From assembly GCA_951406725.2 (NCBI GenBank), contig OX597815.1:189864001-189926000 (forward strand): a stretch of DNA of 62,000 bases. Reading direction: 5' to 3'. A model generated the notes under the pieces. That model was not told the origin of the DNA. It saw nothing but the letters and a program-made list of their open reading frames with translations, and made no database searches. This DNA comes from Octopus vulgaris (taxonomy: Eukaryota). Positions within the stretch are counted from its first letter, which is position 1; the number at the start of each line of letters is the position of its first letter. Made by a program: the position numbers and the translations under genes. Of the stretch, positions 8,745 to 57,690 are shown piece after piece.

Positions 8745-10420
8745 GTGGTGAGTTGTAATATGTATATGAAATTAAAGAAGGAAAATGCACACTTTACATA
8801 GTTTTAATATAATTTTTAATACATCATATATTGTGTTTGTTGACCGGTTTCACTTTCTCTAATCCTGACTTTAAAATATATTTAAATGTGTATCTTCTTA
8901 AGAAAAAACTTTTTGTCCATGTCTGAGGAGTTTATGAATGAATCATTCAACAAGTAGAAAAATTTAAATGCAGTTAAATTAGATATTTCCATTCTAAATT
9001 GTTGAAGTTTGAATTAATTTTTCGCTTATGGAAAGTATTTGGGAAATTCTGGATATGGTCACAGAAGTCATCTAGTGTTTTATTCCTACATTTAGGTGGA
9101 AGATTATTGCTTCTGTCTTTAACCAGTGATTCATCCTCGTTGTTGTAGTCAGTTAGTGCTTCTGTGAGTCATAGTTTTCTGCAGAATTCTGAAATATTGT
9201 TTTTAAATTCATTATGGTTAACTCTTCGTGGGGTTGGAATGAACTTTAATCCTTTAACTAGTATATTGATCTTTGTTGCAGAGAGATTTTTCTTTGATAA
9301 ATTTGTTACTTTGGGTTTCTCCGAGGAGTTTTGTTCCAACATGTGTCCCTGTTTCTCTCCACTCGGTCTAAAAAAATTTACTGTAATTTGGTTGGTAGAA
9401 GTTAGTATTATTTATATCATTAATTATATCAGTATTGTTATTGTTATTATTATATTGGGATTACTGGGAGGTTGGTATTGCTGTCTAGGTTAACTGGTTT
9501 TACTTACGTGGTTCAGGTTTCTTCGTTGGAATAAATTGTTGAGGTGCTTAATTATGTTTAGGATGTTGAGGAGTTGGTTGTGCTGTCTGGGTAAATAGGT
9601 TGAGTTTCTTTGTTGAGAGGTAGAGGAAGTTTCTTGGACGTTTCTAGTTGCTGGGGAGTAAAATTTACTCCTAACCCTAGGTTGGTTTTTTCTAGAATGT
9701 CTTATTAGTGAGTTGTCCCTATTACTAGATTGAGAATGGGTTATTTCCAGGTGAGAAGTCAGTTTTGTGTGTTTGTGTTCTTTTGGATGTTTATAGTTAG
9801 ATCTCAGTGGACGTGTATTTATGTCTGTAGATGTACGTGTTCTAGATTTTTTTAGGAAGGGGTTATATGAAGTGTAGTCTCTTTTAAATTGAGTTTCGTA
9901 ACTAAGGAAGAAATTAAAACTGCTTTCCCATCGTTGCAGGGAATATATTTCTTCCGACTCACAGCTGTCTTTCCATAGTTTTATAACACTTTCCAAAAGT
10001 TGTTCATCAGCATGTTTAGTGAGTCTAGTAAGCATTTCTTCAGCGGTCGTTTCATATTTTTGTTCGTTATTCGATGCCCTGAGTTTAAGTAACTCAATCT
10101 CTATTTTCATTTTAATGTCATGATTGATGAAAGTGAAACCGGTCGACAAACAATATAAGATATATTAAAAATTATATTAAAACTATGTAAAGTGTGTACA
10201 TTTTCCTTCTTTAAATCCTTATCTATATAAATTGGAGCAATCTCGGGTATAACCAGCTGAAATTGATTGCAAAGATAATCTGACGCTCGACTGAGGATAG
10301 AAAACTCCGAATGATCCGTCCTTGTTTTCCTTGTATCATCTGTCTGGATATTTTGTTGTCCCTTTCTTGTTTCACCTAATAGTCTGGATGTTTTACGTTC
10401 TTGTCCCATTTTTGTGTCAT
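8745..10420 (-). mobile_element. Internally deleted Penelope-like element with inverted pseudo-LTRs
   Basis: ORF 9490-10149 continues, frameshifted, into NLSKKNLSATKINILVKGLKFIPTPRR (9224-9300), the LxKGLKFxPTP motif preceding PLE RT. 8770-8870 is an inverted copy of 10118-10215, and both carry GTGAAACCGGTC(G/A)AC. Confidence 0.75.
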
Positions 10421-11004
10421 ATATATATATATATATATATATATATATATATATATATATATATATATATATAGATAGAGAGAGAGAGAGAGAGATAGAT
10501 AGATAGATAGATAGATAGATAGATAGATAGATAGATAGACAGACAGACAGATAGATATAGATATATATGGATGTACGTATGTGTGTGTGTATATATACAT
10601 ACATACATACATACACACAGTAATCCCTCGACTATCGAGAGTGTTACGTTTCAAAGCCCCCATAGTAGGTAAAAATCCACGAAGTAGTGCACTGTATATT
10701 TTTTAAATTATTTTTATAATTTGTATATATTTATTTTATTATGGAAGCAAAACAACCCCACGGAGGATTCAACGTAAGCTTAAATAATAAGCTACGATAT
10801 GTGAGTCGTGATAGGTGAACCGCGATATGGCAAGGAATTACTATATATATATATATATATATATATATATATATATATATATATATATATATATATATAC
10901 CGGAGTAAACACATAAATGTGAAACAAGGTGGAAAAAAAGAGTACTCAAATACCAGTGGTAGAGTAATATGCTTTATTTAAAGCAGCAGAAAATTCAACA
11001 AAAC

Positions 11005-11042
11005 CTGTTACTCTGAGTTTCCCGTTGCCGTTCATCGGACAG
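11005..11042 (-). ncRNA. Minimal type I hammerhead-like motif (core CCGAUGA), left arm of palindrome
   Basis: CUGU-CCGAUGA-A CG GCAA CG G-GAAAC-UCAGA-GUA-ACAG; stem I CUGU/ACAG. Confidence 0.65.
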
Positions 11043-11121
11043 TTTTTGCTAGAATGGAACCGATATGTCAATTCTATCCAGACTGGATAGAATAGACTTA
11101 TCGGTTCCATTCTAGCAAAAA

Positions 11122-11159
11122 CTGTCCGATGAACGGCAACGGGAAACTCAGCTTAACAG
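11122..11159 (+). ncRNA. Mirror-image hammerhead-like motif, right arm, stem III damaged
   Basis: CUGU-CCGAUGA...GAAAC-UCAGC-UUA-ACAG. Confidence 0.5.
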
Positions 11160-55105: not shown

Positions 55106-55325
55106 GCTTACAGAGTTTAAACATCACGAAGAAGAATGATAAATACGGTCCCTTATGGGTGGAATGTCATTCAACATGATGTGTTGCATCCATTTTGCAG
55201 TCTGGGTCTCATCAGGTGCATCCACACATTATGTTGTGTCTCGCTAAAGGTCCTGAGTTTTGGTTGTCATGTCGTTATGTGCCCGTCTGGTTAGCGACTG
55301 AAACTTTACAACAATTCTCAATCAA

Positions 55326-55794
55326 CCCTTTCGTTACTGTATTTTTTTGAGATGCTCTGTGTTTCTTTCAATTAATTTTAAATATAACAAAGAATTTAGT
55401 AAAATAACTTAGCCACCATTCAGCTAGTATTAGGAACATAAATTGTGACTAAGGTTTGGTGGAAGATTTTTATTCAAAACTTATGAAAATAAGACATTTG
55501 TACCCAGAGCCAGAGTTGGTTTCAGCCAGGTTGGTAACCCAAGGGTTAGGATTGTTTCTCTATTATATATTTTAACCCCTTTGTTACCATATTTCTGTTG
55601 AGATGCTGTGTTTCTTTCAATTAATTTTAAATATAACAAAGAATTTAGTAAAATAATTTAGCCACCATTCAGCTAGTATTAGGAACATAAATTGTGACTA
55701 AGGCTTGATAGGAGATTTTAATTCAAAACTTATGAAAATAAGACATTTGTACCCAGAGCCAGAGCTGGTTTCAGCGGGGTTGGTATCAAAAGGG
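55326..55794. mobile_element. Two adjacent piggyBac-type MITE copies (55326-55545, 55576-55794)
   Basis: Direct near-identical copies of 51247-51465 with CCC/GGG ends and TTAA-like flanks. Confidence 0.8.
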
Positions 55795-57075
55795 TTAAAT
55801 TAGCTTTCTATAATAATTGCAAACATTTGTAAAATATAGACAAATAACTGCTTATAAAAAAGAAAAAATTGGTAGGGGAAGTGAACGGATGGGCAGGGAT
55901 GGATTGAGTCACATTGGGTTTAAGACAAAAGAATGGTACTAGAAAAGAGAAGGGGGCAGATATATGCAGGCTAGAATGTCTAGGGGCTGAAAGGTTGTTG
56001 AGCTAGCTATCATAGGTCAGGATGCATATACATGCATTCACATACACATGCTCATACATACACTCACACAAGGGATATTGGTCCACCTGCCCTTATTGTC
56101 AGGTTTGTATAATTCATGTTTGTATAACCCATGATTGGAAGACAATCTTACCAGAAGTCTGTCATTGCAGTCACCTCAAAACTAGGGCAGCTCGCAGACA
56201 ATCTGACTCGCTTCACATTTATATTACTGAAGGTGAATCACATACCCCTACACATATATATACATACCCACATGCATACATACACTCACACATACATATG
56301 TACATATACATGCACTTTTTTATATGTATATATTTACACATACATATACATACCTGCTCCTACCTAATACATATATTTTTATAAACACCCATGTACACCC
56401 ACCCACACACACACAGGTGTATGCATATACCCATACACATATATATTTATACACACACACATATATACACATGCATATATATATATATATATATCTGCAT
56501 ATACACATAATAGAAAAATGTTACAAAATAGAAGCTACATGTGGAAATGTAAGGGGAATGTATATATATTCATACACATGCATGTGCAATCCACATACAT
56601 GCACATACATGTATGTAGGCATACACCCACACATAAACGCCCCACTCTCCCCACACATGTATACATATATCTACACACGCCCACCCACACACAAATATAC
56701 TTGCACACATACACATTCCTGCATCACGTTAGTTTTTCAAGCATTAACTAATTGTTGGTATATAATATCATTATTATTATTATTATTATTATTAATAAGT
56801 AGCTGCATTGTAAGGTTACATATCTGAACTTATATGAACATCAATATTTGCTCACAAGTGCAAAAATATAGAAAAACATATTTTTGCTTCTCTACATAAT
56901 CCATCTGTTCTGTTAGTTTAGAGGCTAATCTCTGATACCTTTTAGTTTACATACTTTAGTGACTCACAGTTGTGTTCCAGAGGTATCATGTAGGAACGTT
57001 GCTACAGGTCACTCAGCTATAGAAATGAGTTGCGACATCACTAGTGCCAAGCTGTATCGACCTTTGCCTTTCGCC

Positions 57076-57690
57076 ACCAGCGTGGTGGTATCTCTTAGAT
57101 ACCCTAAATTATAATTTTAATAATAATTATTACCTTTGAAGGTTTTTATTCCCATGCTGGCCACCTGATATGATTGGTATTTAAATAACGATCTTATCCT
57201 TATTTATATAAATTTATATATTTACTTCGTCATTATATTCACTGTGGTGGTATTTTGATCATATCACACCAGGAGTTTTAGGCAGACAATTTAAACTGGT
57301 CGTGTGCATACGTGCATATATATATATATATATATATATATATATATATATATATATATATATATGTATACGTTCGTATATGTAAGTATATCATATGTTG
57401 CTTATATATATATATATATATATATATATATGTGTGTGTATATATATATATATATAATATATTTGTATTTATGTGCTATCTGAGTATATTCCACTGATGA
57501 AGGCAAAGCATTTCTTATGCAGAGCCAGAAATCCGGGATCTGGAATTATCCAGTATTTTTTTGTTTTGCTAGTTCATTTTGTCTCTTCTCTCCTGGTGCT
57601 GTATGACCATTTAATGTTGTTTTAGAGTCAAGTTTTGGCTGCTATTTCCAGCGTGATTGTATCTCTTAGATACCCTAAATTATAATTTTA
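57076..57690 (+). mobile_element. Partial-tandem non-coding element carrying a hammerhead
   Basis: About 43-bp direct repeat CCAGCGTG..GTATCTCTTAGATACCCTAAATTATAATTTTA at 57076-57119 and 57649-57690. Confidence 0.65.
57490..57546 (+). ncRNA. Type I hammerhead ribozyme motif
   Basis: UUCCA-CUGAUGA-AGGC..GCAU..AUGC..GCCA-GAAA-UCCGGGA-UC-UGGAA; 5-bp stem I, canonical core, near-palindromic stem III, predicted cut after 57541. Confidence 0.85.

What the first reader, a model, noticed from the sequence alone, without database searches (positions are those of the whole stretch)
8745..57690. Dense, diverse population of Penelope-type hammerhead ribozymes in short non-coding elements
Seen: about 15 motifs with stem I-CUGANGA-stem II-GAAA-short, often palindromic stem III-NUH-stem I. 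Cores are canonical at 11430, 23513/23595, 23921, 33346, 43816/43896 and 57495, and variant or decayed at 11032/11126, 11926, 24098, 28436, 36284, 44566 and 47442. They belong to at least eight unrelated sequence families, and three PLE coding remnants (8745, 30240, 37172) lie in the same window. Established: PLE pseudo-LTRs carry minimal type I hammerheads with palindromic stem III that cleave as dimers (Cervera and de la Pena 2014; Lunse et al. 2017). Inference: these are non-autonomous, retrozyme-like HHR elements mobilised by PLE enzymes and numerous enough to be a major repeat class in this genome. I cannot tell whether these families are already catalogued.
Basis: partly seen in the sequence, partly recalled or inferred. 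Interest (0 to 1): 0.85.

Follow-up and report, generated by a model that had tools for sequence, protein, structure and literature searches.

The report
Penelope-type hammerhead motifs in (TA)n nests
The window really does carry about a dozen small Penelope-type hammerhead ribozyme motifs, sitting in short retrotransposon fragments that landed in TA-repeat tracts, but this is a pattern already described for animal genomes.

Summary
The observation largely holds. My own type I hammerhead (HHR) descriptors find 2, 5 and 12 motifs (strict, medium, relaxed). Dinucleotide shuffles give 0.03, 0.20 and 1.08, and the reversed sequence gives 0. Four do not: 11032/11126, 28436 and 44566. Rfam's hammerhead models detect none of them.

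Features outside the descriptor match published Penelope-like element (PLE) minimal hammerheads:
- palindromic stem III;
- an unpaired base at the start of stem II;
- a U3-A8 core variant;
- a predicted double-hammerhead dimer in four cases.

Nine of 10 loci lie within 120 bp of a (TA)n array (P about 0.0002). Three loci are head-to-head inverted pairs with 3' ends outward.

Two PLE coding remnants are solid: 37175-37840 and 8977-9411, both minus strand. The one near 30240 is only weakly supported.

Best reading: these are PLE-derived, mostly dead-on-arrival insertion products, either extreme 5'-truncated ends or inverted pairs made by priming on both strands. One family of about 210 bp (24020-24230, 47366-47590, 11804-12001) has fixed ends and looks like a discrete non-autonomous unit.

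No head-to-tail tandem arrays exist in the window, so "retrozyme" is not met. The kind has been known since 2014, so interest is modest.

The parts
23425..23689 (.). Head-to-head inverted pair (element E4). It has two about 120-nt arms that are nearly identical and a 23-nt unique centre. Each arm carries one hammerhead reading outward.
   Evidence: Self-BLAST gives 93.6% over 265 bp. Sequence read. A read-through RNA folds into a hairpin of about 120 bp, -231.8 kcal/mol, z = -35.
23446..23523 (-). Canonical minimal type I hammerhead, left arm. Parse: gcgg CUGAAGA a-GGCC..41 nt..GGCC-c GAA ACAUAUGU A cugc.
   Evidence: Strict descriptor hit. The homodimer MFE is a double hammerhead.
23591..23668 (+). 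Canonical minimal type I hammerhead, right arm. Same parse as the left arm, with stem I gcgg/ccgc.
   Evidence: Strict descriptor hit. Dimer -37.6 against 2 x -14.1 kcal/mol, with intermolecular stem III.
23852..23930 (-). Hammerhead of a second family. It has core CUGAAGA, a 7-bp stem II after a U.U mismatch, palindromic stem III ACAGCUGU, H17 = A and a 3-bp stem I. It sits in a 184-bp unit (23784-23967) between two (TA)n arrays.
   Evidence: The cofold MFE is a double hammerhead.
24020..24230 (+). About 211-bp unit between (TA)26 and (TA)34, family F3. Its min-HHR at 24094-24128 reads guuu CCGACGA a GAGC ucc GCUC GAA ACGU U agac, a U4-to-C core.
47366..47590 (+). Second F3 copy, 87% identical to the first, with the same 5' and 3' ends and different flanks. 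Its min-HHR at 47438-47472 has core CCGAGGA.
11804..12001 (-). Divergent F3-like copy of about 198 bp between two (TA)n arrays. Its min-HHR at 11900-11937 has core CUGUCGA, the same GAGC/GCUC stem II with a different loop, and a compensatory C-G in stem I.
57463..57690 (+). About 228-bp unit flanked by TA-rich microsatellites. Its hammerhead at 57488-57546 reads auucca CUGAUGA a-GGC..GCC-a GAA AUCCgGGAU C uggaau.
   Evidence: The cofold MFE is a double hammerhead.
11422..11533 (+). Hammerhead with canonical core, a 5-bp stem II (AGCUG/CAGCU) and a 67-nt AU-rich loop. Stem III (ACCUGUGU) is imperfect. The 5' strand of stem I lies in a (GTCTCAGAT)3.6 repeat.
33258..33603 (.). Old inverted pair (62% identity). 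The left arm carries a canonical core at 33312-33357(-) with stem III ACGU and only 2 bp of stem II. In the right arm the similarity becomes weak from the GAAAC box inward.
43718..43994 (.). Inverted pair (77% identity). Canonical CUGAAGA cores lie at the inner end of each arm, at 43785-43825(-) and 43890-43943(+). Stem II is 3-4 bp, and stems I and III are AU-rich and weak.
36191..37174 (-). 3' untranslated part of the PLE fragment. It ends in a U3-A8 variant hammerhead at 36255-36293, which reads UUGAUAA GGUUC..GAACU GAA ACAUGU U. The motif is about 40 nt from the element's 3' end, where the giant (TA)n array resumes.
   Evidence: Sequence. The U3-A8 variant is described in PMC4209133.
37175..37840 (-). 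PLE coding remnant covering the end of RT, a CX4CxxC linker and the GIY-YIG endonuclease. It is 5'-truncated against a 1.2-kb (TA)n array.
   Evidence: Pfam GIY-YIG 3.4e-07. tblastn to 21 RT+GIY-YIG proteins reaches 3e-46. The profile HMM gives 4.5e-73.
8977..9411 (-). PLE N-terminal coding remnant, matching about residues 1-115 of full-length PLE proteins. No RT follows it.
   Evidence: tblastn reaches 2e-17. The HMM gives 3.9e-09 and 1e-05.
30134..30808 (-). Possible heavily decayed PLE RT remnant. Two weak matches are collinear: an ADKG-like motif at 30808-30734 and an RT motif at 30274-30134. Their spacing fits (534 nt against about 522 expected).
   Evidence: bit scores at most 23. Nothing in the HMM search at E<=10.

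Best explanation
These are real minimal type I hammerhead motifs of the kind carried near the ends of Penelope-like retrotransposons (PLEs).

**What the copies are (inferred).** The copies in this window are mostly by-products of PLE retrotransposition, not working ribozyme genes.
1. A PLE RNA, or a short PLE-derived RNA, with a hammerhead near its 3' end is reverse-transcribed at a nick made by the GIY-YIG endonuclease. The nick lies preferentially inside (TA)n microsatellites.
2. Reverse transcription usually aborts early. This leaves 130-350-bp fragments that hold the hammerhead plus 24-140 nt of downstream sequence.
3. When both DNA strands prime cDNA synthesis, or the cDNA snaps back, the result is a head-to-head inverted pair with the 3' ends outward.
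4. Repeated hits on the same TA tracts build nests of unrelated hammerhead units, as at 10.9-12.1 kb and 23.4-24.3 kb.

**Role of the ribozyme (inferred).** In the source element the ribozyme, acting as a dimer through its palindromic stem III, would process multimeric transcripts. It may not be needed for insertion.

**One exception.** Family F3 (24020-24230, 47366-47590, 11804-12001) has constant ends. It is probably a discrete non-autonomous unit of about 210 bp that PLE enzymes copy in trans.

**Shown versus inferred.** Shown here: the motifs, their excess over chance, their architecture, the TA association, the inverted geometry and the PLE coding remnants. Inferred: the insertion mechanism and any cleavage.
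For: **Excess over chance.** Motif counts are 10-60-fold above shuffles and zero in the reversed sequence.

**Features not required by the first descriptor match published PLE min-HHRs (PMC4209133):**
- palindromic stem III: ACGU, ACAUGU, ACAUAUGU, ACAGCUGU, AUCCgGGAU;
- an unpaired or mismatched base at the start of stem II;
- a G-C first pair of stem II in F3;
- a U3-A8 core variant;
- pairs on opposite strands 100-700 bp apart;
- mostly single motifs.

**Dimer prediction.** RNAcofold gives the double-hammerhead dimer as the MFE for four motifs.

**(TA)n association.** Nine of 10 independent loci lie within 120 bp of a perfect (TA)>=6, against 2.6 expected (P about 0.0002). The PLE fragment at 36191-37840 is embedded in a 5-kb (TA)n array. 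It carries the CX4CxxC linker proposed to direct microsatellite targeting (PMC8557442).

**Position in a PLE.** A hammerhead variant sits about 40 nt from that fragment's 3' end. In an independent metagenome locus (L009), an F3-like hammerhead lies about 270 nt downstream of a PLE endonuclease remnant on the same strand.

**Mechanism from the literature.**
- A purified PLE protein nicks and extends both DNA strands in vitro. Hammerhead-dead mutants still insert (PMC11167929).
- 5' truncation and adjacent inverted truncated copies are standard PLE features (PMC8557442).

**Copies are unlikely to work as ribozymes.** A read-through transcript of the best pair folds into a hairpin of about 120 bp. 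That would block ribozyme folding, which fits dead-on-arrival copies.
Against: - No full-length PLE is in the window, so no short family could be matched to the 3' end of an autonomous element.
- The one PLE 3' end present shares no BLAST-level similarity with the other hammerhead units.
- Rfam hammerhead models miss every motif, so the call rests on descriptors and architecture.
- Several motifs have a weak helix: 33312-33357, the 43.8-kb pair, 36255-36293 and 11422-11533.
- F3's identical ends in three copies argue against random 5' truncation for that family.
- Covariation is underpowered. With three sequences, 160 of 500 shuffles do as well.
- No RNA or cleavage data exist.
Confidence: 0.68

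Rival explanations
1. The units are a separate class of non-autonomous, retrozyme-like elements. Each has its own short RNA that self-cleaves, possibly circularises, and is copied back into the genome by PLE enzymes in trans.
For: - Family F3 has the same 5' and 3' termini in two independent insertions, and a third divergent copy has similar length.
- F3's stems are kept, with one compensatory change.
- PLE-derived non-autonomous retrozymes are proposed in PMC7229834 and in the 2026 preprint 10.64898/2026.07.22.740005.
- The units are non-coding and 180-350 bp long, within the retrozyme monomer size range.
Against: - The defining head-to-tail tandem arrangement is absent. No hammerhead has a same-family, same-strand neighbour. 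An RNA flanked by two sense ribozymes therefore cannot be excised from these loci.
- The motifs are the minimal PLE type, not the canonical type I with loop-loop contacts seen in most invertebrate retrozymes.
- Both close F3 copies carry a U4-to-C core.
- Inverted pairs would fold as hairpins.
Confidence: 0.25
2. The palindromic units are foldback or MITE-type DNA transposons that insert at TA. Mariner remnants are present in the window. Under this reading the hammerhead-like strings inside them are coincidental.
For: - The window holds many near-palindromes without any hammerhead: 10972-11194, 12641-13186, 31116-31351 and 59318-59612.
- Mariner transposase fragments are present at 20984-21418 and 24981-25295.
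- The flanks are TA-rich.
Against: - Six of the hammerhead-bearing units are solitary and not palindromic.
- Canonical cores with all three helices are 10-60-fold above chance, and absent from the reversed sequence, which keeps palindromes.
- The ribozymes in both arms of each pair read outward, as expected for cDNA copies joined at their 5' ends.
- No TA duplication is visible at the ends of 23425-23689.
Confidence: 0.05

Closest known systems
Minimal hammerheads of Penelope-like elements (min-HHRs; Cervera and de la Pena 2014, PMC4209133; Lunse et al. 2017, not held in the library)
   Same: - Type I topology with the CUGANGA/GAAA core.
- Short stem I (3-6 bp).
- Extra or mismatched base at the start of stem II.
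- Palindromic 15.2-16.2 positions or a small palindromic stem III, implying action as dimers.
- U3-A8 variant present.
- Many unrelated families per genome.
- Most copies single or in opposite-strand pairs 100-700 bp apart.
- Co-occurrence with RT-GIY-YIG remnants.
   Different: - Several motifs here have very long stem II loops (38-67 nt).
- None could be placed inside a pLTR pair, because no full PLE is present.
- Local density is about 1 per 6-8 kb. That is far above the genome-wide averages implied by published counts, for example about 9,000 in Xenopus tropicalis, but this is a single window.
PLE insertion architecture (Craig et al. 2021, PMC8557442; PMC11167929)
   Same: - Strong 5' truncation.
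- Inverted truncated copy joined head-to-head.
- Insertion bias for microsatellites including (TA)n.
- CX2-5CxxC linker in the endonuclease region.
- Priming on both strands shown in vitro.
   Different: - The copies here are extreme truncations that keep little more than the ribozyme.
- The 30-40-bp 'tail' could not be identified without more copies.
Metazoan non-LTR retrozymes (Cervera and de la Pena 2020, PMC7229834; preprint 10.64898/2026.07.22.740005)
   Same: - Short, AT-rich, non-coding units with a type I hammerhead.
- Proposed dependence on PLE enzymes.
   Different: - Retrozymes are head-to-tail tandem arrays that give 170-400-nt circular RNAs. The units here are solitary or inverted.
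- The ribozymes here are the minimal PLE type.
Schistosome SINE-like hammerhead elements (Sm-alpha / Sj-alpha; described in PMC6765202)
   Same: Family F3 is a discrete interspersed unit of about 210 bp with an internal hammerhead.
   Different: - No pol III promoter boxes are evident.
- A T6-8 run near the 5' end would stop pol III.
- The F3 core carries U4-to-C or A6-to-U changes.

Membership tests
Hammerhead ribozyme, type I | Conserved core CUGANGA ... GAAA ... U-H(not G) in type I order | tested here: met
   Eight motifs have an exact core. Three have one substitution. One has the U3-A8 covariant.
Hammerhead ribozyme, type I | Three helices closing the core | tested here: met
   Fully met for 23446-23523, 23591-23668, 23852-23930, 57488-57546 and the three F3 copies. 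One helix is weak in 11422-11533, 33312-33357, the 43.8-kb pair and 36255-36293.
Hammerhead ribozyme, type I | Match to the curated Rfam covariance models (Hammerhead_1 and relatives) | tested here: not met
   No hit at gathering. None at E<=10 in the 541-nt search around the best pair. None among the 150 rows listed for the whole window, where 133 lower-scoring rows were not shown. The long stem II loops and loop-less stem III probably defeat the models.
Hammerhead ribozyme, type I | Self-cleavage 3' of H17 | not testable with these tools
   Needs in vitro transcription of monomer and dimer constructs.
PLE minimal hammerhead (min-HHR) | Palindromic 15.2-16.2 positions or a small palindromic stem III, so that two copies form a double hammerhead | tested here: met
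   Stem III sequences are ACGU, ACAUGU, ACAUAUGU, ACAGCUGU and AUCCgGGAU. The RNAcofold homodimer MFE is the double hammerhead for four motifs.
PLE minimal hammerhead (min-HHR) | [quoted passage not shown] | tested here: met
   F3 has a bulged A and then GAGC/GCUC. The 23.5-kb pair, 23852-23930 and 57488-57546 instead have an A.C, U.U or A.A mismatch before the first G-C or A-U pair.
PLE minimal hammerhead (min-HHR) | Location in the terminal repeats of an RT-GIY-YIG element | tested here: inconclusive
   Only one PLE 3' fragment is present. It has a variant motif about 40 nt from its end. L009 shows the same layout for an F3-like motif. No pLTR pair is in the window.
PLE minimal hammerhead (min-HHR) | Families with compensatory changes in the stems | tested here: inconclusive
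   F3 has 86% of cells paired against 11-50% for slid registers, and one G-C/C-G swap. With three sequences, 160 of 500 shuffles do as well.
Metazoan non-LTR retrozyme | Head-to-tail tandem repeats (150-450 bp monomers), each with a hammerhead | tested here: not met
   No direct tandem array contains a motif. The tandem arrays found (periods 62, 77, 186 and 249) lack cores.
Metazoan non-LTR retrozyme | Unit-length linear and circular RNAs | not testable with these tools
   No transcript data are available.
Penelope-like element, EN+ (coding remnants) | RT followed by a C-terminal GIY-YIG endonuclease | tested here: met
   37175-37840(-) has GIY-YIG above the Pfam cut-off. It aligns to the last 200-250 residues of 690-820-aa proteins, and three of the five scanned carry both RVT_1 and GIY-YIG. 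The RT part itself is truncated here.
MITE / foldback DNA transposon | Terminal inverted repeats bounded by a target-site duplication (TA for mariner-type) | tested here: inconclusive
   No duplication is visible at 23425-23689. The TA-rich flanks make duplications hard to see at other units.

The most novel reading that the evidence does not exclude
Family F3 is a solitary, SINE-like, PLE-dependent element whose hammerhead core is compromised (U4-to-C), yet it kept amplifying. A strikingly similar PLE-linked hammerhead family in host-associated metagenomes shows the same split. It has 26 C4 copies and 24 U4 copies, in distinct subfamilies. If this holds genome-wide, PLE machinery would be selecting the hammerhead fold, for example as a recognition or priming structure. 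Alternatively it tolerates a weak C4 ribozyme, and efficient cleavage is not what is selected.
Probability: 0.15. Interest if true: 0.5.

Novelty: new member of a known kind. Interest (0 to 1): 0.25.

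Why it matters
The finding confirms in one more animal genome that PLE-type hammerheads are abundant, highly diverse and mostly carried by truncated or inverted insertion debris. It also links them locally to (TA)n tracts, which act as repeated landing sites.

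For annotation:
- These units should be labelled as PLE-derived repeats.
- Their long hairpins explain the spurious microRNA-like Rfam scores.

The only points that go slightly beyond the literature I read:
- the very high local density;
- the fixed-end family of about 210 bp;
- the recurrence of a C4 core in amplifying lineages.

Each of these needs genome-wide data before it means anything.

Tried and rejected
- **Rfam.** Searches at gathering and at E<=10 returned only microRNA-like scores caused by (TA)n tracts and palindromes, and no hammerhead in the rows listed.
- **First variant-core scan.** It was mis-parameterised and missed even the best pair. One search replaced it.
- **Pattern scans for more copies.** Viral contigs and prokaryotic genome contigs gave none. 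The single metagenome scan returned a different, probably cnidarian-associated, family and no copies from this genome. Covariation for the window's own families therefore stayed underpowered.
- **Naming the organism.** The LINE RT search gave only 50-59% identical full-length relatives (one partial match at 74%), from fish, amphioxus and unnamed metagenomes. The taxon remains unknown.
- **Related locus L002.** The region downstream of its PLE endonuclease has only a poor motif, so I did not use it as evidence.
- **Hammerhead at the start of the 8977-9411 PLE ORF.** I looked for one, as in the anole element, and found none.
- **Motifs considered and rejected as hammerheads:** the 10991-11173 palindrome, 28436, 44566 and 8508-8638. 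In the last, the core sits in an indel of one arm only.

Full report

The window is AT-rich (about 36% GC) and full of (TA)n and (CA)n tracts and interspersed repeats. It looks like repeat-rich non-coding animal DNA.

Rfam finds nothing at gathering thresholds. In E-value mode the listed rows show only microRNA-like scores caused by microsatellites and long palindromes. A 541-nt search around the best candidates returns no hammerhead family at E<=10.

I therefore wrote an explicit type I descriptor: stem I, CUGANGA, stem II, GAAA, stem III with A15.1-U16.1, H17 not G, stem I. Counts were as follows.

| Setting | Motifs found | Mean of 100 dinucleotide shuffles | Reversed (uncomplemented) sequence |
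|---|---|---|---|
| Strict | 2 | 0.03 | 0 |
| Medium | 5 | 0.20 | 0 |
| Relaxed | 12 | 1.08 | 0 |

No shuffle reached the observed value. The reversed sequence keeps palindromes and local composition, so its zero count is a useful control. The heptamer CTGANGA is itself twofold enriched, at 44 against 20.3.

A second descriptor is tuned to published PLE features. It allows a bulge or mismatch at 10.1, requires a palindromic stem III and allows at most one core change. It finds 6 motifs against 0.27 +/- 0.57. The excess over chance is real.

**2. Motif by motif**

Good motifs:
- 23446-23523(-) and 23591-23668(+): stem III ACAUAUGU.
- 23852-23930(-): stem III ACAGCUGU.
- 57488-57546(+): stem III AUCCgGGAU.

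Canonical core but one weak helix:
- 11422-11533(+)
- 33312-33357(-)
- 43785-43825(-) and 43890-43943(+)

Variant core but sound helices:
- Family F3 at 24094-24128 (CCGACGA), 47438-47472 (CCGAGGA) and 11900-11937(-) (CUGUCGA). All three share a bulged A, a GAGC/GCUC stem II and an ACGU stem III.
- The F3 structure pairs 86% of cells, against 11-50% in slid registers, and shows one G-C to C-G swap in stem I. Three sequences are too few for significance.

At 36255-36293(-) the core is UUGAUAA. This is the U3-A8 covariant already reported for PLEs (PMC4209133).

Four listed positions are not hammerheads: 11032/11126 (a 223-bp near-perfect palindrome with no stem II or III), 28436 and 44566.

RNAcofold predicts the classical double hammerhead as the homodimer MFE for four motifs. 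In it, stem III is intermolecular and stem I forms in trans. The dimer is 5-9 kcal/mol better than two monomers.

**3. PLE coding remnants**

The ORF at 37172-37702(-) has a GIY-YIG domain above the Pfam cut-off and a CX4CxxC motif upstream of it. A search of 1.8 billion representative proteins gave 4,527 relatives. The query aligns to the last 170 or so residues of proteins 690-820 aa long. I scanned five of these, and three carry both RVT_1 and GIY-YIG.

I used 21 such proteins for tblastn and as a profile HMM against all stop-to-stop pieces of the window. Only two remnants appear:
- 37175-37840(-), the C-terminal part (E 3e-46 by tblastn, 4.5e-73 by HMM);
- 8977-9411(-), the N-terminal part (E 2e-17).

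Near 30240 there are only two weak but collinear matches with the right spacing. I count that remnant as possible, not shown.

**4. Anatomy and context**

Nearly every motif sits in a non-coding unit of 180-350 bp bounded by TA microsatellites. Nine of 10 independent loci are within 120 bp of a perfect (TA)>=6, against 2.6 expected (P about 0.0002).

Two nests, at 10.9-12.1 kb and 23.4-24.3 kb, each hold two or three unrelated hammerhead units separated by TA tracts. The 10.9-12.1 kb nest also holds the hammerhead-less 10972-11194 palindrome. The PLE fragment at 36191-37840 interrupts a 5-kb (TA)n array, and its hammerhead variant lies about 40 nt from its 3' end.

Three loci are head-to-head inverted pairs with the ribozymes reading outward: 23425-23689, 43718-43994 and 33258-33603. 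The youngest pair has almost identical arms. A read-through RNA would be a hairpin of about 120 bp (-231.8 kcal/mol, z = -35), which is incompatible with ribozyme folding.

No motif has a same-strand, same-family neighbour. No tandem array in the window contains a core.

**5. Mechanism**

All of this matches the published behaviour of PLEs:
- min-HHRs in terminal repeats;
- thousands of heterogeneous copies per genome;
- most copies single and attributed to truncated PLEs;
- some copies in opposite-strand pairs 100-700 bp apart (PMC4209133);
- heavy 5' truncation, adjacent inverted truncated copies and microsatellite targeting including (TA)n, with the CX2-5CxxC linker proposed to mediate it (PMC8557442).

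A purified PLE protein nicks and extends both DNA strands in vitro. Hammerhead-dead mutants insert normally (PMC11167929). Priming on both strands gives exactly the observed geometry: an antisense copy, then a sense copy, with 5' ends joined and 3' ends outward.

I therefore read most units as dead-on-arrival PLE insertion products in (TA)n.

F3 is the exception. Two independent insertions share both termini, and a divergent third copy has the same length and layout. The retrozyme label does not survive, because the defining tandem arrangement is absent (PMC7229834).

**6. Side result**

A metagenome scan with the F3 stem II/GAAACGT pattern found a large family in host-associated metagenomes. 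Its hammerhead reads C[U/C]GACGA-a-GAGC-uaac-GCUC-GAAACGU-C.
- 26 copies carry C4 and 24 carry U4, in distinct subfamilies. Some copies sit directly beside an inverted copy.
- One copy lies about 270 nt downstream of a PLE endonuclease remnant on the same strand (L009).
- A U4C hammerhead is known to lose most activity in vitro yet still support viroid infectivity (PMC3088659).

The recurrence of C4 in amplifying lineages in two unrelated sequence sets is the most interesting loose end.

**7. Novelty and verdict**

The kind of element, its architecture, its diversity and its link to PLEs are all published. The hypothesis that short hammerhead repeats are non-autonomous PLE derivatives is also published (PMC7229834; preprint 10.64898/2026.07.22.740005). 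What may be new is limited to uncatalogued families in an unidentified genome and a high local density.

- Interest: 0.25.
- Novelty: new member of a known kind.
- Confidence in the main explanation: about 0.68.
- Confidence in chance or DNA-transposon explanations: about 0.05.

Noticed in passing
L003-L122 (metagenome loci); L009:3145(-) with PLE EN remnant at 3940-3413(-): A large hammerhead family in host-associated metagenomes reads C[U/C]GACGA-a-GAGC-uaac-GCUC-GAAACGU-C. It splits into a C4 subfamily (26 copies) and a U4 subfamily (24 copies) with different downstream sequence. Some copies sit directly beside an inverted copy (head-to-head), and one is PLE-linked.
   Followed up: partly
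window 34051-39041: A giant (TA)n array of about 5 kb (TRF: 2.1 kb plus 1.2 kb) is interrupted by the 1.65-kb PLE 3' fragment.
   Followed up: partly
window 39646-43203 (-): A non-LTR retrotransposon with an intact 658-aa RT ORF (RVT_1 6.5e-32, with a PHD-like finger). The AP-endonuclease ORF upstream is invaded by a 600-bp (ATAT)n array. A second fragment of the same element lies at 44831-45455.
   Followed up: partly
window 1055-1490, 2675-3064, 7350-7779, 16492-16930, 20758-21170, 26144-26474, 50126-50593, 53117-53530 and others: The most abundant repeat in the window is a SINE-like family of about 420 bp, with 14 or more copies at 73-92% identity, often next to microsatellites. It contains no hammerhead core.
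   Followed up: no
window 253-453, 39015-39335, 44048-44384, 48131-48459, 54562-54886, 59003-59267, 60485-61102: A second repeat family ends in a 62-63-bp tandem repeat, with up to 7.3 copies at 60650-61102.
   Followed up: no
window 10972-11194, 12641-13186, 31116-31351, 59318-59612, 8335-8640: Several long near-palindromes have no hammerhead. They may be foldback or MITE-type elements. 10991-11173 scores 80 bits against the plant MIR5998 model on both strands simply because it is a long hairpin.
   Followed up: partly
window 8758-8877 and 10109-10228; 10266-10454 and 44631-44815: The N-terminal PLE remnant is bracketed by a 120-bp inverted repeat (86% identity). Its upstream 190 bp, which starts right after a (TA)n tract, recurs at 44631-44815 (84% identity) next to another small palindrome.
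   Followed up: partly
window 20984-21418 (+), 24981-25295 (+): Mariner-type transposase fragments. The second has the Mos1 HTH_48 domain (3.9e-11). The first has only a weak HTH_32 hit (E 0.019).
   Followed up: no
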